NCBI GenBank assembly: GCA_002269645.1
Contig: NIVC01000130.1
Coordinates: forward strand, 248,001-312,000
Origin: Macrostomum lignano
Taxonomy: Eukaryota
Reading direction: 5' to 3'
DNA length: 64,000 nt
This document shows, piece after piece, positions 44,520 to 64,000 of the stretch. Within the stretch, counting starts at the first letter, position 1; every line of letters starts with the position of its first letter. The notes below the pieces were generated by a model. It ran no database searches and was not told the origin of the DNA. It saw only the letters and a list, made by a program, of their open reading frames with translations. The position numbers were made by a program, and so were the translations under genes.

Positions 44520-46240
44520 ATGAGCAGTCGCAATGACACAGATCTTCTAGACCAACTTATAACCGGCTGCACAGATCACGAAGCTGCACCGGAACGTGGC
44601 TGTGAGTTTCTATGGTAATTGCTTCAAAATGGGTACCTAAAGTGCAATTTTGTGAGCGGCCATACATTAATATGGAGATCTTGCATGAAACAAAGTTTGT
44701 ACCTTAAGAGATTATATCGCTGACCAAGGCTCGGATTCGCTAATACTAACAAATTCCTTTGCCATAATAAATCAAAACCTATTTTAACACCGTAAATTTG
44801 CAGTCATCCTAGTCCAAGCCGTAGTCGGCGCATCTCACCCCAGTCAGCTGGTCTGCAACACTCGCTTACAGACTTCAGTTTCTCCAGAGCTGGCTAAATC
44901 TGGTTTGTTTCGAAAAAGATTATCGAATTCCACATCAGCAGCTTCTGCTGAAACTACTTACTGCTGTTGCTATTGTAGTGCAGATTCCCAGACGGGGCAG
45001 TCAGTCGGTCATTCTGCAGCCTGTCTGATGTCAGTACTATCAGCATCGACGACAGCAGCCTTCAGTAACATGCGCCTGAAACGAACAAAAACTGCCCAAT
45101 TGTTGAGCAGCCGTGAGATCTCCCAAGTAACTGGAACTGCATGGCAATTCGGTTGTCCTAAAGAGCTGATAGCGTTGGTTTCAGTGAGAGCACTTGCAGC
45201 TATAGGAGACGTTCAAAACGGTTTGAAGCTTCTACCAGGACACGTCCTTGAAGCCTGGCACTACTTGGAGGAGAGCATCGAGCCTGATTTACTGAGAATC
45301 GCCGCGAAAGTTGCCCAACAGATCTTGTCGACAGATGCTGAGCCGTCACCACAGGAGAGGGAACGAGTAGTTCGACCCGAGGTTCGTGCCCAAGATTGCC
45401 CGCCGCTAATGACCGATGGCTCCAGGGCTGCAGCTGCCACAGTTAATGGTGGGTAAAAATCAGTACTCAAAAGCAAAAAAACTGTGAAATCTTAAATGCT
45501 GTTGGCTTATGACTTTATTATATTGTACATGTAACCTAAATGTAGTAGTTAGAGCATCGGACCAACGACTGAAAGGTCGGACTGAAACAATATGTGTCCT
45601 TGAGCAAGACACTTAACTCTGCATTGCTTCAGTTCACCCAGCTGTAAAATGGGTGCCAGCATTAGCTGGGGTAATTGAGGCTGTGTGTGACGATCTCCAG
45701 TCCTTGGACTGAACAGCCGTACGCAGCCTTCAAATGCGCCGAGCAATAGCTGCGGCTGAGCTGTCGGTTGCACAATCGGCCCAATTAGGGCAGGTGTAAT
45801 CAATTATGATTATTATCATTAATACTCGTATTATTTAATATTATTACGTACGATTGAGTAGCATGCTTCTGCAAAAGTCAAAAATAATTATTTTATCTGC
45901 TCATTTTCAACAACACGTCATCCCTAATGCTGGAAATATTTCTCCAGAAGTGCAGCCAAGTTTGCCGAATCAGACCTACTTTTTTTCCTCGGTAACTCGA
46001 TCAGGTCATTTCCCAGAGCCAAGTCCAATCAGCAGAACCGCAAGCAGTCAGTCTCAGCAGCAGCAACCACAACTACAAGTACTAGACGACCGATGCAAGA
46101 GCTGCCACAGACAGGTGCTGAGTCGAACCTTGTTGCCATGCGCCCACCTGGCACTGTGCCAGCAGTGCTCTGAGATCAATCAAAGCTGCCCAGTCTGCGG
46201 ATCGGCAATATTGGCCACAATTGTGACTTACATCTGTTAA
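44520..46240 (+). CDS. Divergent IAP-like E3 ligase (degenerate BIR-like region, C-terminal C3HC4 RING), 3 exons, 339 aa
   Basis: join(44520-44601,44804-45448,45948-46240) = 1020 nt with phase-1/phase-1 GT-AG introns. RING CKSC...LLPCAHLALCQQC...CPVC at the extreme C-terminus, as in IAPs. The RING is secure; exon 1 and the BIR assignment are less certain. Confidence 0.7.
45545..45822 (+). mobile_element. tRNA-derived CORE-like SINE, copy 1 (in intron 2 of the RING gene)
   Basis: A-box-like TAGTTAGAGCATCGG; GTGTCCTTGAGCAAGACACTTAACTCT...CAGCTGTAAAATGGG resembles the CORE domain; (ATT)-type tail. A homologous inverted copy is at 54515-54760. Confidence 0.75.
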
Positions 46241-46809
46241 TTGCGCCAATGTGTAGCTACATGTACTTGACGAGTGGCCCTTTTAAAGTGGCCACTTTTA
46301 AAATGGAGGTGTTGGGTTTCCGAAATCAACTCTCCCTCTCGTCTCCGACGCGACATTCGTTCTCTCGTTCCTATAGCCTCATTCGACATTGCCTCAGCTA
46401 ACGCATTTCAGGGCCTCTAGCACTAAGGAATAAGACATATTCAAGTGAGTTTGCAAGACCACGCACTGAACTGAATTCCTGCAAAAATTCCAGTAAAAGC
46501 GAGTACATGTAACTGTCCACCCGAGGGCCGAGGCAGCGTCTATTTTACATGTATACATGTACATGAATTTCCAAGATTCAACATCTAAATTAGCCATGAA
46601 AATTTTAATTTCGATTTCGAATTCCAGAAAAAAATCGAAATAATTCCCAATCTTAAACAGACATTTTGTGTAGAAAAACTATATATGACTTATGTGTGTG
46701 GATCGAAAGAGAAGTAAAGAAGCACCTGAAGATGTAGTTGGAGTTGTATCTTATTGTACGCTCTGCAACCGCACCCCCATCATCCCGCACCCCACTCTAC
46801 GTTTCTGTC

Positions 46810-46935
46810 GACTGCTCAGCGCCCATCACAGTGCAGAGACTGCTCAGCGCCCATCACAGTGCAGAGACTGCTCAGCGCCCATCACAGTGCAGAGACTGCT
46901 CAGCGCCCATCACAGTGCAGAGACTGCTCAGCGCC
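46810..46935. repeat. 28 bp tandem GACTGCTCAGCGCCCATCACAGTGCAGA x~4.5
   Basis: Directly visible. Confidence 0.93.
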
Positions 46936-47227
46936 GATTGCACTTCTACCACTAGCAAAATTTAAAATTTCGATTTCAATTTCGATTTTGGAAAATTCTG
47001 TCAAAAAAGTCGATTTCGTCTTCAATTAAAAAATCAGTTTCGATGATCCATCTCTATCATCATGCTTATGTCCAGCACTCCACGCTACCCGGACCTCTAC
47101 TCGCTCCACTTAGGCGTCTCATCTCGCTTGTGTTTTAGCTTGCTTCTGTTGTGCAATCGTGCCCTTTCTCGCCCTCCTGCCCCGCTCCAACCCTCCAGTC
47201 TGCCCCACCCCTCCAATCAATAATCAA

Positions 47228-47586
47228 TGTGTACGCCGATCACGCCACCTTGCACCACCACCCCATACTGTACATTTGTTCTTAAGTTATATTCATGTAC
47301 GCGTAGGACCAATGAAAAATATATAGTCGCTGTCTGGAGGGCGACTCCTCCCTTGCTCGCGTTGGTCCGCCTCCGTTGGCTATTGAATAAAACGACTCGT
47401 CTACCATAAAAAGTGCACGGCGAACTGCATCGGCTACGGTGTGTAAGTTCGTATTCGCGAGTTACTGTCCTTTTTCCTGCTTCTCCCTAGGGCGCGGGAC
47501 GGGAGCTCTGACTGGGGACCTGGGGGTCGCAGCTTCCCGACAGGTTAAAGCTGTAGGCGTCGCTCCGGAGGACGGGGCTCACAACA
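47228..47586 (+). mobile_element. Possible solo LTR
   Basis: GC-rich island bounded by TGT...ACA, with a TATA-like AAATATATAG followed by AATAAA. No convincing TSD found. Confidence 0.25.
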
Positions 47587-47861
47587 CTTCTTTTTATCCG
47601 GATTATTTTAATTTTGGTAAAAATACTTCTAAAATAGTCTAGATGCGTTAAAAAATTACTCATAAATAATAAATTTTAAATAAAGTTTCATTTATTTTTG
47701 TTGCAAGATCATTGATGATCATTGGTGTTTATCCATGTACATGTAACTCGTGTTGCTTATTGAAGAACAGTTTTCTTTCGTCAACACAAAATTTCTGATC
47801 TTCTGGTAAAGTGGCTCGCTTGGCAAGTAAAATAAAGAGAAATCCGAAAATCAACATGTGG

Positions 47862-47910
47862 TTTTTTTCGACGCGTTTCGCACACCTAAGTGCATCGTCA
47901 GGTATATATA
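47862..47910 (-). ncRNA. Minimal type I hammerhead ribozyme motif of the Penelope-like-element type
   Basis: Minus strand reads C-CUGACGA-U-GCAC(UUAGGU)GUGC-GAAA-CGCG-UC-G: catalytic core, 4-bp stem II, palindromic stem III ACGCGU and a GUC cleavage triplet. Stem I pairs poorly. Confidence 0.65.
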
Positions 47911-48600
47911 ACGAAAGGTGTGAGTAAGCGAATTTATGAATTATTTGTCAATGAAACGTATCTAGCTGGTGAGTAAGTATTTTGTATGTACAAAGTAGTA
48001 GGAGGTTGATTGTCCGTAGGGCGGGGCGAAGACCAATAGGCAGAAAACAAAATATAATTGAATGAGCACTACAACAAGGTCAGTGTGCTCTCTCACTCAG
48101 AATACACGGGGGACATGGCCTGCACCACTGTGTTGGAGTTGCGTATTAAGGGTGGGCGACTGGTTTTTTATGTACAAGGCTTCTAAATCTTGATCTTGTG
48201 ATCAGATGGGCATCGATCGATGATTTTAAAACGTTCTTCAGGTTTTACAAGTAAAACGTACTTCAGATATATGAACTGATCTTCTGTCATATAAATTGAA
48301 TTTCTTCTCAAGCCTAAATTTTTCCACAGAGAAGTTGCCAAACAAAGACTGAACAAAAGGGGGTCTATCTAGAGCGATGCTCTATTTTAAAGTACAGACG
48401 ACATAGGGCAAGATGAATAATTTGGCGAAAAGTGTAGTCCAATATTGACGTCAATATGTAGGAGTACGGAGTCCAACTTGACTTTCCAGTCCAGTCCTGG
48501 TGCAGGTGAGCAACCGATGCAACAAGCTTAAGACTTATATAGTGTGCGACTGCTTGTGTGGAAGGTCAAATGATCCGACCTCAAGTTTGATTGTGGGTGC

Positions 48601-48895
48601 CAGGGGTGTCGCCACCGGCAGGGGGGGGGGGAACATGTCCCCCTTGGTAGGGGGAACATGTCCCCCTACAAGGACTATTTGTAGAAGCTACATGTATGGG
48701 GAGGCCAATGCTTTGTCACCCCCCACCCCTCCTTGTGCCCTGTTATGGAAATCAATAATTTTGCTTCAGGGTGACAAAACATAGCACCTGCGGCGCCAGA
48801 ATGAGCGCTGACAACACGGATTCTGAAAATAATGTGAATTCTTGGCTTTGTCCCCCCCCCCACCATCATAAAACCCATGGCGATCGACGCCCCTG
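48601..48895. mobile_element. Putative hAT-like MITE (295 bp)
   Basis: TIRs CAGGGGTGTCG / CGACGCCCCTG. The 8-bp flanks GTGGGTGC / GTACGTGC match at 6/8. Confidence 0.6.
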
Positions 48896-49438
48896 GTACG
48901 TGCTGCCGTTTTTGTTGCTTAAAAAAGTACATAGCGAGTCATCGGCCACTAGCAACGAGTATATAGACTGGAAACGTACGGCGGATCTGCCATCAAAACG
49001 CGGCTGCCACCTTTTATGTCGACGACAATATTAAGGAAGCGAATATTATGCAATAGGTCGCGATCTGTACCAGCTCTCTCTGCTTTCTGCAAAGTAGATG
49101 GAAAATCAATTAAATGAGTGCCATGTATATGCATATGGCAGCACCAAGGACTATTTGTAGATAAAACGTAGGTTGTAATCTTCCAGTGTGGTCCTTCGAT
49201 CTTTTGCAGACAATTAACATGCAAAATTGTGAGTGCCGCTTTTAGTGACACAGTGTGTACAATCCTTATGCCAAAATGGTGTGATAAATGCTAATCATTT
49301 AATACAATATATTGCCATTGGTAATCGACTGCATATCATATTTTTGCTTACGAAAGAGTGCATATGTATAGCTAGAAGAATTTCTGGCAGCCAACAAAAT
49401 TATTATTTTTTAAATAAACGCAAATACTCGTATATAGT

Positions 49439-50296
49439 TACGAAGGGTGGGCAAAAAGCTTTTGGCAACTGGCTCATAACTTTTTAAATAAACGTTTAAA
49501 TGCAAACATTTTTATCTCATAAATATGAGTCTATTTTGCGTTTGTTCGTAAATTTTCAGCTCATTGCACGGACTTTTTTGTTCCCTAGAGCATTTTTAAT
49601 AAACGTACAGTTTCGTTTTCGGCCTTCTCTTCAAATGGAATCTATCACTGCTGATCAGTGGAGATTTTATGTTTTCATGCGATCGCAGCTCGGAGAAAAT
49701 TCTGCGCCGGCCCATGGGTTTCGCTCACATGGAAGCTCAGATGTTCGTCGTCTTTTTTCAGCATCAATGGGCCAGAGACAGTTGTTATGGTGGCAAATGG
49801 ACAGAACGTCATGCCACGTTCTATACTGGCGAGGTTTTGCCTAAATTCGTGGCTTCAGTCATGGAAAAGCAGCCAACCCGCCTCCAAAGTGGCAGAATCA
49901 CTTAAGCACCACGACAAACGCCTCCAGCCACACTGCGGCCATGAAAACGAGCTTTTTGGCCGATAACAAGCTAAAGGTGATACCGCACCCTCCATACAGT
50001 CCTAACTTGGCGCCCTGCGACTTCTGGGCCTTCCCGAAGCTGACCGAACGCATGACTGGATGCCATTTTCAGCGGCCCCAAGACCTGGCTCGCCGCATCA
50101 ATTCAGAGCTGAACACCATGACAGACATCTAGTAGGAGTACCGCGCTGCCTTCGAGGCATGGATACGTTGTCACCAGAAATGCATAGAACGTTGCGGAGA
50201 TTACATTGAAGGACTTTAATACAGTTTAAATATTTGGGACCAACAATTTATCTGCAATTGGGAACCTAGTAAAACTTTTTGCGCAACCATCGAGTA
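49439..50296 (+). mobile_element. Internally deleted, frameshifted mariner (Tc1/mariner) transposon
   Basis: Transposase remnant HHD....H...TSFL...LKVIPHPPYSPNLAPCDFWAFPKL...W....QKCI...GDYIE. Imperfect TIRs (CGAAGGGTGGGCAAAAAG vs reverse complement CGATGGTTGCGCAAAAAG, 15/18) with TA at or next to both ends. About 860 bp versus about 1.3 kb for a full element. Confidence 0.9.
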
Positions 50297-51639
50297 CGTA
50301 ATTAAAGACTTATTAATTTTTATAATAAAATTTTGCAGGTAACCAAAAAGTATTTACGAGACGTCTCTTATTTTTGAATAATTTTGTTTACCACAGTACT
50401 TCCGAGAAATGTGACACACGTATAAGTTTTGAACTTCGGACTATACGCGCGCGCCTGAAGCCACTCTCACTCTCACTCTACCCTGTATAGTACTAATACA
50501 GTCTAACCTAAGAATTAAGTTTTTGTACACTTTACAAACCACTTATTTTAAAAATATACACAGGCGCAAGAGCCAACTTTTTAAAAACGGCTGACGCGCG
50601 GCCAGGGAGTTTTCGGCTTGGCACTCCCTCGGCATACTTAATAACAACATACGCGCGCGCGGCGCGCCTGAAGCCAAACTTTGCTTTTTAATTTTTTGAG
50701 CCAAACTTACTAGTACTACTACTACTACTGAGCTCTGGCTCTGGCATTGGCTAAAATTGTAATATGAAATGGGTATAAAATACTTTGTTTCATTTAAATG
50801 AAATTAATAAATGCTAAATACATGAATACTAACGTCATCATATACTAACATCATATTAACATATTAACGTCCAAGTCAATACTAATGTCATAACGTCAAA
50901 CGAAAGTGACAGTCACTGAGTCACAGACAAAACTGGCTACCACTACCACTGGCACATTGGCCGTGGCTTGTGGCAGCAAATGAAACCATCGTCAGTGATA
51001 TATTTATGTAGAGCTGCTGTCTAACCAGCTGACAATTGTCAATACAAGCCCTAGTTAAATTTCTTTTTTACTTGGTTTTTTCGAAGTTCTAGGGGGCCTA
51101 TTCACAATAGGCCTAATCATATGTAATGAAAAAAATATGTCAATATTCAGTTATTCAGTAAGCTAAAGAGTAAAGACTAAGTGCACATTTATTTAGCTAG
51201 ACAGTAGGAGTAGGTGTTGTTAAAAGGTTTAATTCTGGCATTACTGATATTATCCTTGCTTAGATTAATGAAAGTTTAGAACTTAATATATATATATCAT
51301 ATTTCACTAAGTCTAATAACTAATAAGGGCCTAAAGTAGGCCAACTATGATTGTATTATATGACAATCTTTTAAATAACAATCTAGTAAAGTGTTTTTAT
51401 TCAATTGTTTTTTTGGGGATTTAGGATTTTATGATTCTAGCACTTTTACAAATTAGCACCTTATGTTCATTGTTCATATAGGCCTATTTAGGTCTACTCT
51501 AGCAATCCTCTAGTTTTGCACATTTAATTAATTTTTTTAAGTTTTAACAATTTTTGAATGAAGTTTTACTCTAAAGTTTTAATAAGTTTAACAAGTTAGG
51601 GTTACTGTTATAAGATAGGGTCTGTGAATATAATCCAGT

Positions 51640-52156
51640 CCATAGTGCAGAAGGACAGGTGTACGACGGAAATTTCTGTCGTACATTGAGGTTGGTTGTT
51701 GTATATATCGTACATCGTTCATTTTTGCAAGGGCTCTTTGTTGTACATGTCGTACCGTCGTTGGCCACACTGTCACTGTCGTACATCTCTGACTAGAAAG
51801 CTATATGCATAGGCATTTAAAAATACAATTTCGTTTTCATAATTAAATTAAATTTATTCAAAGTTCTTTTTACAAGGCACAAATAAAATATAATCTTGGC
51901 ATACTTAATAATAATTTTTTATTATGTGGCACCAAATTTCACATTTTTATATTCAAGGCCACACAAATGTGCATCCGTTGTTTTAATCTTAACCTTGTTT
52001 ATTTCTTTTTTGAAATGCGTATTTTTTGAAATGGTTTCTGCATTGTAGTTTGTCGTACAAAAAAAATTACTTAGTTCACTTGTGTTGTACTGTCGTACAG
52101 CAGGCTAAAACTGAAATTTGCCTTCCGTCGTACACAGAAATCCTTCTGCACCATGG
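51640..52156. mobile_element. Putative MITE with 8-bp TSD (517 bp)
   Basis: TIRs CCATAGTGCAGAAGGA...TGTACGACGGAA / TTCCGTCGTACA...TCCTTCTGCACCATGG. Flanks AATCCAGT / AATCTAGT match at 7/8. Confidence 0.7.
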
Positions 52157-52887
52157 AATCTAGTTTGGTAACTGCCACTTTAGTACCTGCCACTTTAGTA
52201 ACAAAGAATGACCATTCCAGTAATAGGGCCTAGCCACTTTGGTAACTGCCACTTCTATAATAAAGCAGATTTATGACTATCAACATTAGGCCTATATCTT
52301 TGAAGCAAAATTAGTAGTCATAATTTTTATTATTGTAATGGCTTTTGCTAATTTAATCATTTTGCTTTTATTATTTATGCTATGTTTTTATAATTTAGCT
52401 TAGGCCTAGTTAGTTAATAAAATAAATAGTTAGATTATTTAATATTAATTATTAAGTCTATTAAATTATTGTTTATAGTAAATTAAAACTGAGAATAAAA
52501 TATCAGCTATCATACATATATAATTTTTAGTCTTAGAAATTTAAGTTAAAGTAATAGAAAAATTGTATACAATTGCCTATAGGCAATACATTTAATGAAT
52601 GGATATTAGGGAAAATAGTACATACCTATGGTTTGATATAATTTTTTTCCTCTATAACACTTTGATATTATATTTTGGACAGAATATATGCAATATGCAA
52701 TGTTCATTTTTTTAATACTTTAACATCACATTTGCAGCATCTGCCATCAAGCCAATTCATTGTTAGCATATTGATTAAGCCATCTAGACTTTTGTTGTTT
52801 AATAAGAATTTAACTGCATCATTATTCAGTCCATCTTGGTTTGCTACTAATAGTAGAATAAGCAAATTTTGCTCCTATAATCAAGTC

Positions 52888-53107
52888 ATGACTGACAATA
52901 TTAGCAAGGCTACTTCTGCAACTAATCCTGCTATACAGACAGTGATTAATGATGTAGTAAAATCGCCTGAGGATAAACACTCTTATCGAGCTCTAGTGCT
53001 AAGCAATGGCATTCGAGTCATGCTTGTTAGTGATAGTGAAGCTGATAGATCAGCTGCATCTCTGTGTGTTTTGGCAGGCAGCATTAATGAACCTAAGGCT
53101 TGGCAAG
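52888..53107 (+). CDS. IDE: IDE exon 1 (from the first ATG; may extend 5' to the acceptor at 52737)
   Basis: ATG at 52888; donor G|GTAATT. Confidence 0.88.
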
Positions 53108-56100
53108 GTAATTGAGCTTTTTATTGTATTGTAAAATGTACTCTGACATTGGGACTGGATTGAAACTTAATAGTGAGTGTGTTCAGTTCGAGTCAGATCA
53201 TCTGTCATTCAATAGTGAGTGTGTTCAGTTCGAGTCAGATCATCTGTCACTCAATAGTGAGTGTGTTCAGTTCGAGTCAGATCATCTGTCATTCAATAGT
53301 GAGTGTGTTCAGTTCGAGTCAGATCATCTGTCATTCAATAGTGAGTGTGTTCAGTTCGAGTCAGATCATCTGTCACTCAATAGTGAGTGTGTTCAGTTCG
53401 AGTCAGATCATCTGTCATTCAATAGTGAGTGTGTTCAGTTCGAGTCAGATCATCTGTCACTCAATAGTGAGTGTGTTCAGTTCGAGTCAGATCATCTGTC
53501 ATTCAATAGTGAGTGTGTTCAGTTCGAGTCAGATCATCTGTCACTCAATAGTGAGTGTGTTCAGTTCGAGTCAAATCATCTATCATTCAATAGTAAGTGT
53601 GCTCAATTTGAATCAAATCATCTATCATTCAATAGTAAGTGTGCTCAATTTGAATCAAATCATTTATCATTCAATAGTAAGTGTGCTCAATTTGAATCAA
53701 ATCATCTATCATTCAATAGTAAGTGTGCTCAATTTGAATCAAATCATCTATCATTCAATAGTAAGTGTGCTCAATTTGAATCAAATCATCTATCATTCAA
53801 TAGTAAGTGTGCTCAATTTGAATCAAATCATCTATCATTCAATAGTAAGTGTGCTCAATTTGAATCAAATCATCTATCATTCAATAGTAAGTGTGCTCAA
53901 TTTGAGTCAAAATCATCTATCACTAAATAGTGAGTGTGCTCAAGTCTTGGGTAACCATCTGTCACTCAGTACTAAGTGTGCCCAGTTCGAGTCATCCATC
54001 ATGACTCCAGTTCGAGTTAAAATATTTCGTGATCTGCTTACACTGCACGATAAAGTACTGATAAAGAAACTGACACCATTTATTCACCTCAGGCCTGGCC
54101 CATTTCTGCGAGCACATGCTATTCCTTGGCACAGAGAAATACCCAGTGGAGGACAGCTATTCAAATTTTATTAACGAGCACGGTGGCATGAACAATGCTT
54201 ATACGGCTGAGGATCACACCTGCTATTTTTTCGATATTGCGCCTAAACATCTCGCTGAAGCGCTGGATCGATTCAGTCAGTTCTTCCTGTGCCCTCTGTT
54301 CACCCCGTCTGCTACTGAGCGTGAAGTGCAGGTAATCAATTTGCGTAATTTTATTGTCCATCCGATTTAGTTTAACTATTTAAAATTTTCAAAACAAATA
54401 TTTCTACTAAAAGTAGCGTATAGAATACGTTTGAACTATTCGACTTCGACTGGATTAGAAAGTCAAAGGGCCGCTGTGCACCCGTGGAAGCATGTGTCTG
54501 CGTGTCTGCGTATAAAAAATTAATAATTGGTTACACCTGCTCTAATGGCCAGATGTGCAACCGACAGCTCAGGCGAAGGCTGTGTACGGCTGTCCAGTCC
54601 AAGGACTGGGGGGTCGCCACACACCCTCTATTACCCCAGCTAATGCTGGCACCCATTTTACAGCTGGGTGAACTGAAGCAATGCAGAGTTAAGTGTCTTG
54701 CTCAAAGACACAAATTGTTCCAGTGGGATCGGGAATCGAACCCCCGACCTTTCAGTAACTAAAATCCGAAGTCAGCTGACACAAATTTCCAAATCCCCTC
54801 CACAGGCTGTCCACTCGGAGCATTCGAAAAACATTCCACAAGATGTTTGGCGTATGCAACAACTTGAGCACACTCTGGCTAATCCTGAGCACGATTATGG
54901 GGATCATTTCTTCACTGGCAGCCTTGAGACTCTGCTGCCAGATTCTTCGAAAGCCGGCGAGCTGAGAGAGCAGCTGTTGAAATTTCATGCTGAAGAATAT
55001 TCTGCTAATAGGCTGCACCTGGCCGTGCTGGGCTGCGAGTCTCTGGATGAGTTGCAGTCCATGGTTGTGAGCACCTTTGCTAGCGTGCCTAATAAGAATC
55101 TGCCGGTGAGACGTTGGGATAAGCATCCCTACGATGGGAGCGAGTGCGGAGTCAAGGTGAGGTATTTGTAATGAATATGGGGATTTGTAATGAATATGGG
55201 GATTTGTAATGAATATGGGAATTTGTAATGAATATGGGAATTTGTAATGAATATGGGGATTTGTAATGAATATGGGGATTTGTAATGAATATGAGGATTT
55301 GTAGTGAATATGGGGATTTGTAATGAATATGAGGATTTGTAGTGAATATGAGGATTTGTAATGAATATGAGGATTTGTAGTGAATATGGGAACTGGTAAT
55401 TAATATGGGGATTTATAAAGAATATAAATAGGGATTTTTAATGAGCACAGCATATCCAGAAAGTCCAACAAGCCTCTTCCTCCAACTGGGCCCAGGTGTA
55501 CGCCGTGACTATCAAAGACGTGCGCACTCTGCAGCTGGTATTCCCCATGCCAGAGCTGCGCTATCACTACAAAGGCGCGCCTGACCGCTACCTCAGCCAC
55601 CTGATTGGTCACGAGGCTCCTGGCAGTATACTGGCCTATCTGAAGCGCAAAGGCTGGAGCAACGCCCTGTCCGCCGGCTGCGGCGGCGGCTCTCTGGGCT
55701 ACGACTTTTTCAAAGTGTCGCTCGACCTCACCGAGGAGGGCGCCAGACGCGAGGACGCCGTCATTGCCACCCTGTTCCGCTATATTGACATGCTCCGGCG
55801 GGAAGGACCCCAAGAGTGGATTTATAATGAGGAGCGCGATTTGGAGTACATGTCGTTCCGGTTTCGGGATAAATCCCAGCCAATCGACTTGACCGAGCGA
55901 CTGTCGGCCAAGATGCTGTATTATCCTCAGAGGGACGCCCTGGCCGCTAAGGTGGTGCTGAGCGAGTACATGCCCGACAAGATTACGGAGTTGTTAAATT
56001 TAATGACGCCAGACCGATGCAAAGTCTACATTGGTAGTCAGGTGTGATTCATTTGGTATTTTTTGGCGAGAGCTTTTTATAAATTAGAGACTTTATCAAC

Positions 56101-59100
56101 TAGTGACCCCCATACATACTAGATACAGTAGTTATCCTGACCCAAAATGACCTCGGTTGACCTCGTACTTATACTCGTACACAATAGACATGGACAGTAG
56201 TTGTCCTGACCCGAAATGACCCCAGTTGACCATATACGCAATAGACATGGACAGTAGTTGTCCTGACCCGAAATGACCCCAGTTGACCATATACACAATA
56301 GACATGGACAGTAGTTGTCCTGACCCGAAATGACCCCAGTTGGCCATATACACAATAGACATGGACAGTAGTTGTCCTGACCCGAAATGACCCCAGTTGG
56401 CCATATACACAATAGACATGGACAGTAGTTGTCCTGACCCGAAATGACCCCAGTTGGCCATATACACAATAGACATGGACAGTAGTTGTCCTGACCCGAA
56501 ATGACCCCAGTTGGCCATATACACAATAGACATGGACAGTAGTTGTCCTGACCCGAAATGACCCCAGTTGGCCATATACACAATAGACATGGACAGTAGT
56601 TGTCCTGACCCGAAATGACCCCAGTTGACCATATACACAATAGACATGGACAGTAGTTGTCCTGACCCGAAATGACCCCAGTTGACCATATACACAATAG
56701 ACATGGACAGTAGTTGTCCTGACCCGAAATGACCCCAGTTGGCCATATACACAATAGACATGGACAGTAGTTGTCCTGACCCGAAATGACCCCAGTTGAC
56801 CATATACACAATAGACATGGACAGTAGTTGTCCTGACCCGAAATGACCCCAGTTGACCTCCGTATCTATTTAATTTGCCCGCCCGCCAGTCGGTCAAGGA
56901 CAAGTGCACCCGAACCGAGCCGTACTACGGTGTCCAATACGGCGTTGAGAAATTCTCGCCCGAACTGCTAGCGGCCTGTCGCGGGGATTATCAACAGCTG
57001 GCTACTGCTGACAGCTTTTGGCCCAACGGCGAACTGCCAGACTCGGAGCTGCACTTGCCTAGTCCTAATCCGTTCATTCCGACCGATTTCTCGTTGAAAT
57101 CGGCCACCGATCAGCACAGAGACTCGCCTCCGCCAGCCTCTGCCGGGCCTCTGATCCTGCGATCGGACAGGCGGGGCCGGCTGTGGCATCGGTTAGATTA
57201 CGATTACGCACTGCCCAAAGCTTGCTACACTATCGAGCTGATATCTCCGTGCGCTTACACAGATTCTTATGCCGCAGTTTGTTCCAATCTTTACTTTCAA
57301 CTATTGTCCGACGCATTGAACGCGTTGACCTACGATGCCGAATTGGCCGGATTGAATTATCGAATTGATCCCACGGAGAATGGCGCCGTTCTGCATTGTT
57401 CCGGTTATAATGACAAATTGCCCGTACTGTTGAATAGCGTTCTGCAGAAGATGACTAAGCCAGACTTCAATCCTGTTCGATTTGCTAGTCTGTACGATCA
57501 TGTAAGTTTGTAGTGACTTTCTATGGCTTTTGTGTGACCCGTGAGATCTGATTGTCTATGGCTTTTGTGTGACCCGTGAGATCTGATTGTCTATGGCTTT
57601 TGTGTGACCCAAGAGATCTGATTGATTACATGGCTTTTGTGTGACCCGTGAGATTTGATTGTCTATGGCTTTTGTGTGACCCGTGGGATCTGATTGTCTA
57701 TGGCTTTTTGTGTGACCCGAGAGATCTGATTGTCTATGGCTTTTTGTGTGACCCGTGAGATCTGATTGTCTATGGCTTTTTGTGTGACCCGTGAGATTTG
57801 ATTGTCTATGGCTTTTGTGTGACCCGTGAGATCTGATTGTCTATGGCTTTTGTGTGACCCGAGAGATCTGATTGTCTATGGCTTTTGTGTGAACCGTGAG
57901 ATTTGATTGTCTATGGCTTTTGTGTGAACCGTGAGATTTGATTGTCTACATGGCTTTTGTGTGACCCCTGAGATTTGATTGTCTATGGCTTTTGTGTGAC
58001 CCGTGGGATCTGATTGTCCTTATGGATTTTGCGTAACATGTGAGATTTGATTTGAGACTTATTTAAACGGAATTTGTGTCATGAGATTTCTGGGAAATGT
58101 GAGCTGTGATGATCCTCATGCAAGTTCGTCATGACCTCATGCATGTCACCACTCTAGTCCGCCAGTGTCACCCACTGTCGCCCAATTTAGATGGAACGCA
58201 GTTTGAAAAACTTCAAGTTGGAGCAGCCCTACCAGCACTGCAGCTTCCATATGAACCTCATCTGCAAGACTCTGGTGTGGACTCCCGACGATCAACTGGA
58301 TGCTTTGGCCAGTAAGTCAATGCAGATTAGTGGTCTGGTTATCAAAACTGTGCTTTGGTTATGTAATATCACCCCTATCAGACTGAAGTCTCACCCCTAT
58401 CTACTCAATCAGTCTAAAAGTAAACTTCTCTCTCGACCAATCCAAAACCTCATCCCCGCCACCTTAAAATCTCAGCCCCCAAAAACCCAGTCACTCCAAA
58501 CCAACGCAAAATCTCATCCCATCAAAGTCAAAGTCTCACCTCAGCAAACTCAAAATCTCACACCCAATAAGTCCAAAATCTCACCTTAACCAAACAAAAA
58601 TCTCACCATAACCAACCCAAAATCTCACCCCAACTAATCCCAAATCTCGCCCCAACCAACCAAAAATCTCACCCTAACCAACCAAAAATCTCACATCAAC
58701 CAACCAAAAATCTCACCCAACTAATCCCAAATCTCACCCCAATCAACCAAAAATCTCACATCAACCAACCAAAAATCTCACCCAACTAATCCCAAATCTC
58801 TCCCCAACCAACCAAAAATCTCACATCAACCAACCAAAAATCTTACTCCAACTAATCCCAAATCTCACCCCAACCAACCAAAAATCTCACCTGAACTAAT
58901 CCCAAATCTCTCCCCAACCAACCAAAAGTCTCACATCAACCAACCAAAAATCTCACCCAGCTAATTCCATCTCACCCCAGCCAACCAAAAATCTCACCCA
59001 ACTAATCCCAAATCTCACCCCAACCAACCCAAAATCTCACCCCAACTAATCCCAAATCTTACCCCAACCAACCACCCCAACCAACCAAAAATCTCAAATC

Positions 59101-62015
59101 AACCAATCAAAAATCTCACCCCAAATAATCCAAAATCTCACATAACCAACCCAAAATCTCGCATCGCCAGACGTCACGCTGGACAGCGTGCTGCAGTTCA
59201 GTCGCCAGATGCAGTCCCGCCTGTACACGGAGACCCTCGTCTACGGTAACGTCGCCGCGACAGAGGCCGAGCCAATCGCCGACTCGGTTCTGGCCTCTCT
59301 GACGGCAACTCCGGTACCGAGATCGGAGATCGCTCGAGCTCGCGACTTCCTACTTCCGGCGGGCACGCATCACCTGTACCGCAGCGTGCACTCGCATCAC
59401 AAGGACTCCGCGTGCGCTGTGTACTTTCAAATTGAGTCCGACGCGGCCGGCGGATTCGACGCTAAAATTCGAACTCGCGTCCTTTGTCGCCTACTTGGGC
59501 AAGTAGTGCAGGAGTCCTATTTTGATTCTCTGCGGACTAAACAGCAACTGGGCTATTTGGTTGGCGTCAGGACTTCGGCTGGGGTTAACACTGACGGTCT
59601 GATTTTCTTTGTGCAGTCTGACAGGTGAGAATTATCAGTTTTGATCATCTCCCACAAGAATCGCCATCTCACCCAAGAATCGCCATCAAGTTTCCCACAA
59701 GAATCGCCATCAAATCTCCCACAAGAATCGCCATCAAGTCTCCCACAAGAATCGCCATCAAATCTCACCCAAGAATCGCCATCAAATCTCACCCAAGAAT
59801 CGCCATCAAATCTCACCCAAGAATCGCCATCAAATTTCCCACAATAATCGCCATCAAATCTCACCCAAGAATCGCCATCAAATCTCACCCAAGAATCGCC
59901 ATCAAATCTCAAGAATCGCTATCAAATTTGCCACAAAAATCGCCATCAAATTTCCCACAATAATCGCCATCAAATCTCCCCCAAGAATCGCCATCAAATC
60001 TCACAAGAATCGCCATCAAATCTCACCCAAGAATCGCCATCAAATCTCACAAGAATCGCTATCAAATTTGCCACAAGAATCGCCATCAAATCTCACCCAA
60101 GAATCGCCATCAAATCTCACCCAAGAATCGCCATCAAATCTCACAAGAATCGCTATCAAATTTGCCACAAGAATCGCCATCAAATCTCACCCAAGAATCG
60201 CCATCAAATCTCACAAGAATCGCCATCAAATCTCACCCAAGAATCGCCATCAAATCTCACAAGAATCGCCATCAAATCTCACCCAAGAATCGCCATCAAA
60301 TCTCACAAGAATCGCTATCAAATTTGCCACAAGAATCGCCATTTACTCCCTCAAAGCATTCGCCTCTTCGATATTCTCCATTGCTATTGTCGCATTAGAA
60401 TCAATATTTAACAATTAAGAATAATTTCCATCCGGATGAAACTCACATCAGGCACCCAGTGTACCTGGAGGAGCGAATCGACGCTTTCATCGACTCAATT
60501 GCCGACGATCTCAAATCGATGCCGGACGAGCAGTTCCAATCTCACGTGGCCGCTTTAAACTCGGTGATCACTGAGAAGCCCAAAAAGATGACTGCACGAA
60601 ATCAGCTGTACTTTGAAGAGATTCGCCGTGGCACATTGTGCTTCGATCGCAAAGAGCGCCTGTCTGCCTGCCTGACTAAGATCACTAAGGATGACCTGCT
60701 GCAGCACGTCAATGTGAGCGATTGATCATTGATTCTTTAATTTCTACCCTAACCCCAACCTGAAAAAGACCCTGCACTCCGAGCTGCTACAAAGACCCTG
60801 TACTCAAGACTACAAAGACCCTGCACTCAAAACTACAAAGACCCAGCACTTGAAGCTACAAAGATCCTGCATTTTAATCTACAAAGACCCTGCACTCTAA
60901 GCTACAAAGACCCAACACTTTAAGCTACAAATACCCTGTACTTTAAGCTACAAATACCCTGCACTCTAAGCTACAAATACCCTGCACTTTAAGCTACAAA
61001 TACCCTGCACTCTAAGCTACAAATACCCTGCACTCTAAGCTACAAAGACCAAACACTTTAAGCTACAAAGACCAAACACTTGAAGCTAAAAATACCCTGC
61101 ACTCTAAGCTACAAAGACCAAACACTTTAAGCTACAAATACCCTGTACTTTAAACTACAAATACCCTGCACTCTAAGCTACAAATACCCTGCACTCTAAG
61201 CTACAAAGACCAAACACTTTAAGCTACAAATACCCTGCACTCTAAGCTACAAATACCCTGCACTTTAAGCTACAAATACCCTGCACTCTAAGCTACAAAT
61301 ACCCTGCACTCTAAGCTACAAAGACCAAACACTTTAAGCTACAAAGACCAAACACTTGAAGCTAAAAATACCCTGCACTCTAAGCTACAAAGACCAAACA
61401 CTTTAAGCTACAAATACCCTGTACTTTAAACTACAAATACCCTGCACTCTAAGCTACAAATACCCTGCACTCTAAGCTACAAATACCCTGCACTCTAAGC
61501 TACAAATACCCTGCACTCTAAGCTACAAATACCCTGCACTCTAAGCTACAAAGACCCTGCGCTTTTTATTCCTCTTTCCTATCCAATCTAGCGAACAGGA
61601 TCAGTGCTCCCATTTCACGAGTATTTCAAGACTTTGCCACGCGTTCCTCATTATAATATGCTAATGAACAGGCCGCCGCGTTCAAATTCCCTTTCTCCAG
61701 ACCTGGCTAAGCAAAGATTCGAAGCAGAGGCGCCGTCTGTCGTTGCACGTTGTCTCCGAGGAGACACACGGCGGCATCAAAGATGCAGACTATGCCAACT
61801 ATACGGTGAGGGCTGGGGTTCGACTCTGCAAATTCATATTTCACTATTCACTATTCATTTCTCGCCCCCCCCAAACCGCGCAGGGAGTCAACATTCCGAG
61901 CGTGCAGGAATTTCAACGCCGCCTGCTGCTTGGCCCGCTGCCAGCGCCGGCCGCTCCGGAGTCGCGGTTTCTGTCCGCATCTGCGGCTACCGCTGCCGCG
62001 GCTGCTAAACTCTGA
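52888..62015 (+). CDS. IDE: Insulin-degrading enzyme (insulysin, peptidase M16A), 10 coding exons, 3042 nt = 1013 aa + stop
   Basis: join(52888-53107,54093-54331,54806-55156,55496-56041,56890-57501,58191-58311,59171-59624,60452-60713,61701-61805,61884-62015). All GT-AG and in frame. Motifs: [29 protein letters not shown] (HxxEH), [11 protein letters not shown]-terminal AKL. Confidence 0.96.
53170..54010. repeat. 42 bp minisatellite, about 20 copies in two subfamily blocks (IDE intron 1)
   Basis: 14-aa periodicity [12 protein letters not shown](F/L)N switching to [14 protein letters not shown]. Confidence 0.96.
54093..54331 (+). CDS. IDE: IDE exon 2 (HFCEH zinc motif)
   Basis: CCTCAG|GC CTG GCC CAT; donor CAG|GTAATC. 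Confidence 0.95.
54515..54760 (-). mobile_element. tRNA-derived CORE-like SINE, copy 2 (IDE intron 2)
   Basis: Reverse complement of the 45545-45822 element; retains a B-box GGGTTCGATTCCC. Confidence 0.75.
54806..55156 (+). CDS. IDE: IDE exon 3
   Basis: CCACAG|GCT GTC (EV-Q-AVHSEH.KN); donor AAG|GTGAGG. Confidence 0.95.
55164..55415. repeat. 19 bp minisatellite ATTTGTA(A/G)TGAATATG(G/A)GG x~13 (IDE intron 3)
   Basis: Period 19 measured at 55164/55183. Confidence 0.95.
55496..56041 (+). CDS. IDE: IDE exon 4
   Basis: CCCAG|GTG TAC; contains [13 protein letters not shown]; donor CAG|GTGTGA. Confidence 0.93.
56110..56860. repeat. 57 bp minisatellite x~13 (IDE intron 4)
   Basis: 19-aa periodicity in all three minus-strand frames. 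Confidence 0.96.
56890..57501 (+). CDS. IDE: IDE exon 5
   Basis: CGCCAG|TCG GTC; donor CAT|GTAAGT. Confidence 0.93.
57522..58030. repeat. 35 bp minisatellite CTATGGCTTTTGTGTGACCCGTGAGATCTGATTGT x~14 (IDE intron 5)
   Basis: Directly visible. Confidence 0.95.
58191..58311 (+). CDS. IDE: IDE exon 6
   Basis: TTTAG|ATG GAA (R.L.NF..EQPYQH); donor A|GTAAGT. Confidence 0.92.
58560..59158. repeat. ~20 bp A/C-rich, nearly G-free minisatellite AAAATCTCACCCCAAC(C/T)AA(C/T)C (IDE intron 6)
   Basis: Directly visible; runs to within about 12 nt of the acceptor. Confidence 0.93.
59171..59624 (+). CDS. IDE: IDE exon 7
   Basis: CGCCAG|AC GTC; donor AG|GTGAGA. Confidence 0.93.
59648..60345. repeat. 21/24 bp minisatellite AAGAATCGCCATCAAATCTCAC(CC) x~30 (IDE intron 7)
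   Basis: 8-aa periodicity QESPSNLT. Confidence 0.95.
60452..60713 (+). CDS. IDE: IDE exon 8
   Basis: CATCAG|G CAC CCA ([10 protein letters not shown]); donor AAT|GTGAGC. Confidence 0.93.
60765..61560. repeat. 23 bp minisatellite GCTACAAA(T/G)ACCCTGCACTCTAA x~34 (IDE intron 8)
   Basis: Directly visible, with a GACCAAACACTTTAA variant. Confidence 0.95.
61701..61805 (+). CDS. IDE: IDE exon 9
   Basis: CTCCAG|ACC TGG gives [19 protein letters not shown], matching IDE 'RR.K.SVHV'; donor ACG|GTGAGG. Confidence 0.85.
61884..62015 (+). CDS. IDE: IDE exon 10
   Basis: CGCGCAG|GGA GTC AAC (I.S..EF.R.L.L.P); ends AAKL-TGA. Confidence 0.85.
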   Translation, partial: GVNIPSVQEFQRRLLLGPLPAPAAPESRFLSASAATAAAAAKL

Positions 62016-62870: not shown

Positions 62871-64000
62871 TTTAATGAGGTGTTTGTTGCGAATGTTTAC
62901 TTTTGTGTTCTTGTTTTTTGTTAATCGTTTTTACTTATTGTGTTTATTTTTGTGTTTAATTGTGGTTGTTTTTGGTGTGTTTTTCTGAATTCATAAGAGC
63001 TGCACCATGGGGTGTTTAGGTTATAGTTAAGGGCATTTTAGGCGGTCTTAATCCGAAAACCGAAATGGCTCGGTCTAAACCGAATACCTCCCAACTGAGT
63101 GTTTATGGGTATTTTATAGGATTGCATGTGCAATTTCAGAACAATAAGCGATTCTTTGTTTTAATTTTATCTACTCTATCTTGTTATTAAACTTGTATTT
63201 AACATTTAATATACATTTAGTTTTAGACTTCAACGTAACTTTAGTGAACAGAAAGATTGTTGTCAGTAGTAGTTCTATGCAGTAGTATGTATTGCTACAA
63301 AACTATTTTGATTATCATTTTATCATCCATCGATCGAAGTGAACGCAGCATGCACCAATTTTATTAAATATATTTTCTCTTGTTTTTGTTGTTAATCTTG
63401 TTCTGTTTGGTTCTAATTAATAAAGTCTGATTAATATTTAAAGAAGCAGTTCACGAAGATGACGGTAAAATTCTTTTCTGCAATAATCTTTTAATTTTTA
63501 GAGTTTTGTTTTACACTCTCTCTTATTTAGTTTGGTGCGATATAATTTTCAAAACCAGTAGTAGTAGTAGTAGTAGTATTTAATAACGTCAGTAGGTAGT
63601 TAAACTAGTAGCAGATACTTTCGAATCTTTTACTCAACCTAATTGATTTTGGCATGATTTTCAAATACGAGAGTATACTACAATAACTTTCACTGTCTAC
63701 TTGTAAAGCAGCATCTGCAGCCCCAGTTTTATAGTCTATGGCGCATGTTCAATGTTTACAACTATGCCTAAGGGACCGCGCATCACTTCAATTCAGATTT
63801 TACTAGGAAAAACAGTAGCAGATTTTAAATCATACGAAGTCCGCCGCACACTCATGGCATTCTCGATTTACAAACCCGAGATCTTCGTGCTCGTGGTTCT
63901 TTTTGTGATAACAGATGCCATGTGCATCCATGCTTTAAATGAAAGGGTTTATCCAACGTTGTGTAAGTGCTGTCATTCAGTTCATGCATTTTTGCTCCAT

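What the first reader, a model, noticed from the sequence alone, without database searches (positions are those of the whole stretch)
52738..52890. Met-less mitochondrial-type presequence on IDE starting exactly at a splice acceptor: AUG possibly supplied by a spliced leader
Seen: an acceptor (…TTTAACATCACATTTGCAG, AG at 52736-52737) is followed by exactly 150 nt, in frame, with no stop and no ATG, before the first ATG at 52888. It encodes HLPSSQFIVSILIKPSRLLLFNKNLTASLFSPSWFATNSRISKFCSYNQV: 5 K/R, no D/E, rich in S/L/F. By a rough estimate, 50 open codons in DNA this AT-rich has about a 2% chance. Established: human IDE has a mitochondrial Met1 isoform about 41 aa longer than the cytosolic Met42 form; flatworm spliced leaders end in AUG, and this AUG can initiate translation in Schistosoma. 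Inference: SL trans-splicing at 52738 would create M-HLPSS… and make mitochondrial targeting of IDE depend on trans-splicing, with leaky scanning or another 5' end giving the cytosolic/peroxisomal form. The alternative is an ordinary upstream phase-0 cis exon carrying the ATG.
Basis: partly seen in the sequence, partly recalled or inferred. Interest (0 to 1): 0.8.

Follow-up and report, generated by a model that had tools for sequence, protein, structure and literature searches.

The report
Spliced-leader start codon on flatworm IDE
In the flatworm Macrostomum lignano, the insulin-degrading-enzyme gene has 50 extra in-frame codons with no start codon of their own; the ATG at the end of the trans-spliced leader almost certainly supplies it, a known flatworm trick seen here on a protein known to have two start sites.

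Summary
The window is Macrostomum lignano scaffold NIVC01000130.1. Position 52738 follows a TTGCAG acceptor. From there, 150 nt run in frame to the first ATG (52888) with no stop and no ATG in any frame (joint chance about 4e-4).

The deposited CDS (PAA89941.1, marked 'partial') starts at exactly 52738, and so does the CDS of both other genomic copies. In this annotation, 5' gene boundaries came from spliced-leader (SL) reads.

In two of the three copies, the bases before the junction read ATTGCATG, the 3' end of the 35-nt SL, instead of ATTTGCAG. This assembly was polished with RNA-seq, so I read that as an imprint of SL-bearing reads.

The M. lignano SL ends in ATG, which lies in frame. So trans-splicing at this site is strongly, though indirectly, supported, and the mature mRNA encodes M-HLPSS…-IDE.

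About 80 of some 105 metazoan IDE orthologues examined have a similar 20-84-residue extension before an internal Met.

The mitochondrial function is not shown. The composition of the extension does not clearly differ from random AT-rich open frames: 11% of them score as high.

SL AUGs as initiators, and trans-splicing-dependent mitochondrial and cytosolic isoforms, are already known in flatworms. This is a new member of a known kind, of moderate interest.

The parts
52415..52737 (+). Proximal upstream region, taken to be promoter plus outron. It is AT-rich (21% GC) and is the only upstream block next to the gene that is shared by all three genomic copies.
   Evidence: blastn L001 vs L003: window 52415-52736 at 87.5% identity, with no match immediately further upstream. 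Differences over -330..-12 are 9 (L002) and 29 plus 6 indels (L003). GC is 0.21. No GTRAG donor lies within the last 600 nt.
52703..52737 (+). 3' splice-site region used for SL trans-splicing: T-rich tract, branch-point-like CTTTAAC, and TTGCAG acceptor (AG at 52736-52737).
   Evidence: Sequence. It matches the M. lignano trans-splice acceptor motif [T/C]TNCAG (PMC8629364). In copies L002 and L003 the last bases read ATTGCATG, which is the SL 3' end.
52738..52887 (+). 50 codons with no ATG of their own, in frame with the SL's terminal ATG and with IDE. Candidate N-terminal presequence (M)HLPSS…SYNQV.
   Evidence: no stop, and no ATG in any frame. The deposited CDS PAA89941.1 starts at this base. 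All three copies are 100% identical here. GC is 0.32.
52888..52890 (+). First genome-encoded ATG (Met51 of the SL-initiated protein). It corresponds to the internal, cytosolic start (Met42) of human IDE. Its context GTCATGA has a purine at -3, against U at -3 for the SL AUG.
   Evidence: tblastn with human IDE (sequence from memory) begins 12 codons downstream, at 52924. An internal Met at the same place is found in about 80 orthologues.
52888..53107 (+). Rest of IDE exon 1. The donor CAAG|GTAATT is phase 1.
   Evidence: Gene model, identical to deposited protein P0242.
54093..62015 (+). IDE exons 2-10: 54093-54331, 54806-55156, 55496-56041, 56890-57501, 58191-58311, 59171-59624, 60452-60713, 61701-61805, 61884-62015. 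The zinc motif HFCEH is at 54101-54115. The C-terminal AKL (PTS1) is at 62004-62012 and the stop at 62013-62015.
   Evidence: The 1063-aa translation equals PAA89941.1. Pfam PF00675, PF05193, PF16187 and PF22456 are precomputed for the cluster.

Best explanation
The window holds one of three near-identical copies of the M. lignano insulin-degrading enzyme gene (BOX15_Mlig011578g1).

Proposed mechanism:
1. The pre-mRNA is transcribed from the AT-rich ~320-bp region upstream.
2. The outron is removed by SL trans-splicing at the TTGCAG acceptor, so the mature mRNA reads …UUAUUGCAUG|CAUCUGCC….
3. The SL's terminal AUG sits about 32 nt from the cap, in a weak context (U at -3). It is in frame with 50 stop-free, AUG-free codons that run into the IDE ORF.
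4. Ribosomes that start at the SL AUG make a 1064-residue form, M-HLPSS…-IDE. Its extension stands where most metazoan IDEs carry their mitochondrial presequence.
5. Ribosomes that scan past start at Met51 (G at -3). They make the 1013-residue form, which ends in the peroxisomal signal AKL.

Shown here: the sequence anatomy; the species and its SL; the reading-frame relationship; the annotated 5' end at the acceptor in all three copies; the SL-tail imprint; and the presence of the 'extension + internal Met' layout in about 80 of the roughly 105 orthologues examined.

Inferred: actual use of the SL AUG (by analogy with Schistosoma), leaky scanning, and mitochondrial import of the long form.
For: Species and gene:
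- 100% identity to M. lignano PAA89941.1. The window equals NIVC01000130.1:248001-312000.

Trans-splicing at 52738:
- The 5'-partial deposited CDS starts at the base after the AG in all three copies. The frame stays open 24 codons further upstream, so the transcript must end within 0-2 nt of the acceptor.
- 5' boundaries in this annotation were cut at peaks of SL-containing reads (PMC5730564).
- The acceptor fits [T/C]TNCAG.
- Copies L002 and L003 read CACATTGCATG|CATCTG where L001 reads CACATTTGCAG|CATCTG. The changed bases reproduce the SL 3' end.
- The assembly was Pilon-polished with RNA-seq.
- Protein models from the older ML2 assembly start 'LQHLPSS' (TTG CAG) for all three copies. So the native sequence is TTGCAG in all three, and the imprint comes from SL-joined reads.

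SL sequence: it ends in ATG.

Frame: SL plus exon 1 translates as MHLPSS…, and the next ATG in any frame is Met51. Joint chance is about 4e-4.

Conservation: 0 of 150 differences among the copies, against 9% plus indels just upstream.

Orthologues: about 80 of some 105 metazoan IDEs have a 20-84-aa, acid-poor, basic extension before an internal Met.

Precedents:
- The SL AUG initiates in vivo in flatworms.
- Human IDE Met1 gives a mitochondrial form, and Met42 has the better Kozak context.
Against: - No junction read, ribosome footprint or peptide was seen directly. The trans-splicing evidence is all indirect: annotation boundary, motif and imprint.
- The extension is a weak presequence by composition. 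It has 5 basic residues in 51 (10%, against a mean of 16%), only 2 Arg, and a hydrophobic moment equal to the null mean. The classifier gives P=0.57, and 11% of random AT-rich open frames score as high.
- With zero substitutions among the copies, there is no dN/dS test of coding constraint. Exons may also have been homogenised by RNA-seq polishing.
- Cestode IDE models show no such extension, so the arrangement is not evidently conserved across flatworms.
- AUG depletion is also expected of an ordinary 5' UTR.
Confidence: 0.55

Rival explanations
1. The mRNA is trans-spliced at 52738, but the 150 nt are functionally a 5' UTR. The SL AUG is mostly bypassed, or it adds a neutral N-terminal tail with no targeting role. 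The open frame is tolerated rather than selected.
For: The composition of the extension cannot be told apart from random AT-rich open frames (11-15% of nulls). GC (0.32) lies between the outron (0.21) and the coding part of exon 1 (0.42). One in three SL AUGs is in frame by chance: 28% in S. mansoni. Cestode IDEs lack an extension.
Against: An in-frame, stop-free and AUG-free 150 nt is unlikely by chance (about 4e-4). An in-frame SL AUG with no stop must yield the extended protein whenever it is used. The extension sits exactly where most metazoan IDEs have a presequence, at a similar length. It is perfectly conserved among copies that differ by 9% just upstream.
Confidence: 0.3
2. An ordinary upstream cis exon carries the ATG and is spliced in phase 0 to the acceptor at 52737.
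For: In parasitic flatworms, cis- and trans-splicing often share acceptors (PMC12582326). Only 6.5 kb upstream was scanned in detail.
Against: The RNA-seq-guided annotation has no upstream exon in any of the three copies, and the CDS is flagged partial. No GTRAG donor lies within 600 nt. The only phase-0 ATG…GTRAG candidate in 46241-52737 (51137-51157) loses its phase or its GT in the other copies. The SL imprint points to SL, not an exon, at the junction.
Confidence: 0.05
3. The ATG is genome-encoded in two of the three gene copies. ATTGCATG|CATCTG in L002 and L003 is the true sequence, so only the window's copy depends on the SL.
For: That is what the deposited assembly reads for NIVC01002067.1 and NIVC01001237.1.
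Against: The four changed bases reproduce the SL's last 8 nt exactly and remove the AG. The assembly was polished with RNA-seq. Models from the independent ML2 assembly begin LQ (TTG CAG) for the variants matching all three copies. The deposited CDSs of these copies are still 5'-partial and start at H, not M.
Confidence: 0.07

Closest known systems
Flatworm SL 3'-terminal AUG used as initiator methionine (Cheng, Cohen, Ndegwa & Davis 2006, J Biol Chem; 'slORFs', PMC9851317)
   Same: The SL ends in AUG. That AUG is in frame with the recipient ORF, and no genome-encoded ATG exists for the N-terminal part. In S. mansoni, 28% of SL AUGs are in frame and more than 40 cDNAs need the SL AUG. In E. 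granulosus, 143 of 187 SL clusters are full-length only with it.
   Different: Those studies are in parasitic flatworms (Neodermata). [quoted passage not shown] Most reported cases add a few residues. Here the SL AUG would head a 50-residue extension on a protein with a second, conserved internal start.
Human and mouse IDE Met1/Met42 alternative initiation (Leissring et al. 2004, Biochem J; summarised in PMC10296325)
   Same: Two in-frame starts 41-50 codons apart. The upstream one is in the weaker context and gives an N-terminal targeting sequence. The downstream one gives the main cytosolic form. Both proteins end in the C-terminal PTS1 AKL.
   Different: In mammals both AUGs are in the gene. 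Here the upstream AUG is absent from the gene and comes from a separate SL RNA. Mitochondrial import is shown for the human sequence and only inferred here.
Echinococcus granulosus thioredoxin glutathione reductase: mitochondrial and cytosolic variants from trans-splicing (Agorio et al. 2003, J Biol Chem; described in PMC4662733)
   Same: A flatworm enzyme whose mitochondrial versus cytosolic form depends on how the SL is joined to the pre-mRNA.
   Different: In TGR, two mRNAs differ by inclusion or skipping of exon I, which carries the signal. Here there is one acceptor and one mRNA, and the choice would be made at translation, between the SL AUG and Met51.

Membership tests
M16A insulysin / insulin-degrading enzyme | HxxEH zinc motif, four M16-type domains, and full-length similarity to IDE | tested here: met
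   HFCEH at 54101-54115. tblastn to human IDE matches across ten exons. 39-44% identity over about 90% of the length to metazoan IDEs, with PF00675, PF05193, PF16187 and PF22456.
M16A insulysin / insulin-degrading enzyme | C-terminal PTS1 (A/S-K-L), as in animal IDE | tested here: met
   The protein ends …AAAAAKL*. Most orthologues end in KL.
SL trans-spliced mRNA of M. lignano | Acceptor AG within the species motif [T/C]TNCAG at the mRNA 5' end | tested here: met
   TTGCAG|C at 52732-52738. Motif from PMC8629364.
SL trans-spliced mRNA of M. lignano | No upstream cis donor or exon paired with that acceptor | tested here: met
   No GTRAG lies within 600 nt. The only phase-0 candidate in 6.5 kb is not conserved. 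No upstream exon is annotated in any of the three copies. More distant exons are not excluded.
SL trans-spliced mRNA of M. lignano | RNA reads with the SL joined to the exon | not testable with these tools
   Indirect evidence only. The annotated 5' end falls exactly at the acceptor, in an annotation whose boundaries come from SL reads. An SL-tail imprint, ATTGCATG, is present in two RNA-seq-polished copies.
SL-AUG-initiated ORF (slORF) | The SL ends in AUG and that AUG is in frame with the main ORF, with no intervening stop | tested here: met
   The SL sequence ends …TTGCATG. SL plus exon 1 translates MHLPSS… into IDE.
SL-AUG-initiated ORF (slORF) | Translation actually starts at the SL AUG | not testable with these tools
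   Needs ribosome profiling, N-terminal proteomics or reporter constructs. Shown in vivo only for Schistosoma (cited).
Mitochondrial matrix-targeting presequence | N-terminal, 20-80 residues, no acidic residues, net positive, rich in Ser/Leu | tested here: met
   51 aa, D/E 0, K/R 5 (+H), S/T 24%. But the same is true of 6-15% of random AT-rich open frames.
Mitochondrial matrix-targeting presequence | Amphipathic helix and overall presequence-likeness above background | tested here: inconclusive
   Hydrophobic moment is 0.51 (11-residue window) and 0.35 (18-residue window). This equals the null mean and is below the orthologue mean of 0.66 and 0.45. The ad hoc classifier (CV AUC 0.93) gives P=0.57; 11% of nulls score as high and 15% of real IDE presequences score lower. 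MitoFates and TargetP were not available.
Mitochondrial matrix-targeting presequence | Import into mitochondria and cleavage by MPP | not testable with these tools
   Experimental.
Dual-start (leaky-scanning) dual-localised protein, IDE type | Two in-frame AUGs with no AUG in any frame between them, the upstream one in the weaker context | tested here: met
   In SL plus exon 1, ATGs occur at mRNA positions 33 and 186 with none between. The contexts are UUGCAUGC and AGUCAUGA. Judging these contexts uses the general vertebrate Kozak rule, which has not been verified for M. lignano.

The most novel reading that the evidence does not exclude
The ATTGCATG|CATCTG sequence in two of the three gene copies is real, not a polishing artefact. 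In that case the tail of the spliced leader, with its ATG, was copied back from SL-bearing cDNA into the genome by local gene conversion. This would have turned a trans-splicing-supplied start codon into a genome-encoded one and destroyed the acceptor. It would be a snapshot of how an SL-borne initiator can be fixed in, or lost from, a gene.
Probability: 0.05. Interest if true: 0.75.

Novelty: new member of a known kind. Interest (0 to 1): 0.42.

Why it matters
Every known flatworm SL ends in AUG, and why that AUG is conserved is still debated. This locus is a clean test case. IDE's two-start, two-compartment layout is established in mammals, and most of the roughly 105 animal orthologues examined here show the same extension plus internal Met. 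Here the first of the two start codons is missing from the gene and can only come from the SL.

M. lignano is the one flatworm with routine transgenesis (PMC5730564). So the dependence of the long, putatively mitochondrial form on trans-splicing can be tested directly with reporters.

There is also a practical point. RNA-seq polishing appears to have overwritten a trans-splice acceptor in the Mlig_3_7 reference with the SL tail, creating a false genomic ATG. If this is common, it affects gene models and splice-site statistics for this model organism.

Tried and rejected
- Rfam scan of the window at gathering threshold: nothing found, so no SL RNA gene here. A search for known SL sequences in the window gave no real hit.
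- Exact look-up of a neighbouring single-exon LRAT-like protein, to identify the organism: not on record.
- First protein search with only the N-terminal 320 aa: it missed the species' own protein, and every listed hit was under 560 aa, which suggests a limit on hit length relative to the query. Repeating with the full 1063 aa found it.
- My recollection that the Schistosoma phytochelatin synthase mitochondrial form uses the SL AUG was wrong. The paper reports no trans-splicing (PMC3101182).
- Cheng 2006, Agorio 2003 and Leissring 2004 are not held in the library. They are cited only through papers that describe them.
- Cis-exon search in 46241-52737: one candidate, rejected on non-conservation.
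- Cestode IDE N-termini as a test of conservation within flatworms: they are acidic and not comparable.
- Paralogue IDE2 as a control for the rule '5'-partial CDS start equals acceptor': its start does not follow an AG, so the rule is not general. The downstream WSC-domain gene starts 2 nt after a CCCAG.
- dN/dS across the three copies is impossible, because there are no substitutions in the 150 nt.
- Other Macrostomum species are not in any searchable collection here.

Full report
**What is there.** The window is AT-poor overall (44% GC) but locally AT-rich around the finding. At 52732-52737 the sequence reads TTGCAG and the next base is C 52738. From there, 150 nt translate to HLPSSQFIVSILIKPSRLLLFNKNLTASLFSPSWFATNSRISKFCSYNQV and run straight into the first ATG at 52888.

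First, the frame is open for a further 24 codons upstream of the AG, back to 52666, again without an ATG. So it is not the ORF that begins at the acceptor. Second, the 150 nt contain no ATG in any frame.

Dinucleotide-preserving shuffles gave these chances:
- No in-frame stop: 0.03 with the region's own composition, 0.009 with upstream composition.
- No ATG in any frame: 0.017 and 0.058.
- Both together: about 4e-4.

**The gene.** I completed the model by hand, and every junction is a canonical YAG|…|GTRAG site. The exons are 52738-53107, 54093-54331, 54806-55156, 55496-56041, 56890-57501, 58191-58311, 59171-59624, 60452-60713, 61701-61805 and 61884-62015.

The protein has the HFCEH zinc motif and ends in AKL, the same peroxisomal PTS1 as human IDE. 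Met at 52888 aligns 9 residues upstream of human Met42 (counted from the alignment). It is therefore the counterpart of the 'cytosolic' start.

**The organism and the deposited annotation.** A search with the full 1063-residue model returns M. lignano proteins at 100% identity. The cluster holds three GenBank entries, all flagged 'partial' and all beginning HLPSS…: PAA89941.1, PAA61130.1 and PAA70440.1. It also holds three UniProt entries from the older ML2 assembly, all beginning LQHLPSS….

PAA89941.1 equals my model residue for residue. Its locus (NIVC01000130.1:290738-320015) is identical to window 42738-64000, and its gene range is exactly 52738-62015.

The frame stays open upstream of 52738. 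A 5'-partial ORF called on a transcript would therefore have been extended if the transcript reached further. So the transcript used for annotation ends within 0-2 nt of the acceptor, in all three copies.

The paper behind this annotation says 5' gene boundaries were set by cutting transcriptional units at peaks of reads that carried the spliced leader (TBONE pipeline; PMC5730564).

The species has a single 35-nt SL, CGGTCTCTTACTGCGAAGACTCAATTTATTGCATG. About 30% of its genes are trans-spliced. The top acceptor motif is [T/C]TNCAG (PMC8629364), and TTGCAG fits it.

**An unexpected piece of evidence.** I aligned the three copies. The window's copy reads CACATTTGCAG|CATCTG. The other two read CACATTGCATG|CATCTG.

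The four changed positions remove the AG, create an in-frame ATG, and make the last 8 nt identical to the 3' end of the SL (…TTTATTGCATG). Upstream of those 8 nt, the sequence is the ordinary outron.

The assembly was polished with Pilon using RNA-seq reads as well as Illumina DNA reads (PMC5730564). The native ATTTGCAG already resembles the SL tail ATTGCATG: it differs by one deletion and one insertion. SL-bearing reads could therefore align across the junction and be taken as a 'correction'.

The ML2-based models for the variants matching all three copies start with LQ, that is TTG CAG. This indicates that the native sequence is TTGCAG in all three. I therefore read the ATTGCATG as an imprint left by reads in which the SL is joined to CATCTGCC.

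That is indirect evidence, but it is specific to trans-splicing at this base. The alternative is that the ATG is truly genomic in two copies. I cannot formally exclude it without the raw reads, and I put it at about 5-7%.

**Consequence for the reading frame.** Joining the SL to exon 1 gives ATG|CAT CTG CCA…, which translates to M-HLPSS…. The next ATG in any frame is Met51. Whenever a ribosome starts at the SL AUG, it must therefore make IDE with a 51-residue extension.

In other flatworms the SL AUG can initiate in vivo, and dozens of mRNAs need it (Cheng et al. 2006, as reported in PMC9851317 and PMC3510090).

The SL AUG has U at -3 and C at +4. Met51 has G at -3 and A at +4. With no AUG between them, this is the layout expected for leaky scanning. 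It mirrors human IDE, where the better Kozak context of Met42 makes the cytosolic form dominant (PMC10296325). Applying the Kozak rule to M. lignano is an assumption.

**Is the extension a presequence?** Evidence in favour:
- Of about 105 full-length metazoan IDEs examined, about 80 have an extension of 20-84 residues before an internal Met that lies 10-30 residues ahead of the KSxEDKRxYR motif. These extensions have 0-2 acidic and 3-13 basic residues.
- The M. lignano extension (51 aa, 0 acidic, 5 basic, 24% Ser/Thr) falls inside that range and ends in a similar basic-aromatic-Ser stretch (…SRISKFCSYNQV|M).
- The 150 nt are identical in all three copies. The 320 nt just upstream differ by 3% (L002) and 9% plus indels (L003). 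Other exons differ by 0.4-1.9%.

Evidence against over-reading:
- 'No D/E and at least 4 K/R' occurs in 6% of stop-free shuffles and in 15% of real stop-free AT-rich windows of this genome.
- The hydrophobic moment equals the null mean.
- I trained a small classifier on IDE presequences against such windows (cross-validated AUC 0.93). It gives the extension P=0.57. 11% of nulls score as high, and 15% of true presequences score lower.
- The human IDE presequence is itself only moderate by MitoFates, at 0.399. A weak score is therefore not disqualifying, but targeting remains an inference.
- With no substitutions among the copies there is no dN/dS test.
- Other Macrostomum genomes could not be searched here.

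**The cis-exon alternative.** There are nine GTRAG sites in the 6.5 kb between the previous same-strand ORF and the acceptor, and none in the last 600 nt. Only one follows an ATG in phase 0: 51137-51157, MSIFSYS|GTAAGC. In the other two copies an 8-nt indel changes its phase, and in one of them the GT is lost. No upstream exon is annotated in any copy. I put this alternative at about 5%.

**Comparison with what is known.**
- SL-AUG-initiated ORFs are established in Schistosoma and Echinococcus.
- The Echinococcus TGR gene makes mitochondrial and cytosolic variants through alternative trans-splicing and exon skipping.
- IDE's Met1/Met42 system is established in mammals.
- Yeast Ste23 is a matrix protease.

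The present case combines these. A conserved two-start enzyme has its first start outsourced to the SL, with a single acceptor and a choice made at translation. In the Macrostomum papers that the searches returned and I read, the SL's ATG is mentioned only in passing, and none of them describes this locus.

I classify the finding as a new member of a known kind.

**Confidence by layer.**
- Trans-splicing at 52738: about 0.9.
- Some translation from the SL AUG: about 0.75.
- Mitochondrial targeting by the extension: about 0.5.

Noticed in passing
L002:9990-10000 and L003:9990-10000 (equivalent to window 52727-52737): In two of the three deposited gene copies, the trans-splice acceptor ATTTGCAG is replaced by ATTGCATG, the last 8 nt of the spliced leader. 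This removes the AG and creates a genomic-looking ATG. It is probably an artefact of polishing the Mlig_3_7 assembly with RNA-seq reads, and it may affect other trans-spliced genes in this reference.
   Followed up: partly
window 51639-52157: A MITE-like insertion of about 0.5 kb with 17-nt terminal inverted repeats (TCCATAGTGCAGAAGGA / TCCTTCTGCACCATGGA) and internal GTCGTACA repeats. It lies 580 nt upstream of the IDE acceptor. It is present in this copy and absent from copy L002, so it is a recent insertion.
   Followed up: partly
window 53169-53994, 55164-55425, 56178-56858, 57520-58052, 58491-59160, 59647-60342, 60786-61565: Seven of the nine IDE introns consist largely of a minisatellite array (periods 19-65 nt, 10-34 copies). 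The neighbouring spectrin gene's introns show the same.
   Followed up: no
L003:18618-18748 (equivalent to window 61884-62015): Copy Mlig002690g1 has a 1-nt indel in the last exon. Its deposited protein (PAA70440.1) is frameshifted at the C-terminus and lacks the AKL peroxisomal signal. This is either an assembly error or a copy that has lost PTS1.
   Followed up: no
window 63121-63128 (also L002:20452-20459 and L003:19712-19719): A second 8-nt match to the SL tail (ATTGCATG|TGCAATTTCAG) lies 1.1 kb downstream of the IDE stop, in all three copies. The ORF after it is short, so this is probably chance.
   Followed up: no
L004:3001-9886: M. lignano has a second, divergent IDE paralogue (BOX15_Mlig019571g1, 44% identity) with no N-terminal extension and no PTS1 (it ends PARF). 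Its 5'-partial CDS does not begin after an AG.
   Followed up: partly
window 6899-37000 (+), 40955-41635 (-), 44905-46240 (+): Other genes in the window are a large beta-spectrin-like gene (calponin-homology domain plus spectrin repeats), a single-exon LRAT/NlpC-P60-like protein of 226 aa, and ORFs ending in a C-terminal RING finger. The 226-aa LRAT-like protein is not on record by exact look-up. The RING-finger ORFs are not among the called genes within 10 kb upstream of IDE.
   Followed up: no
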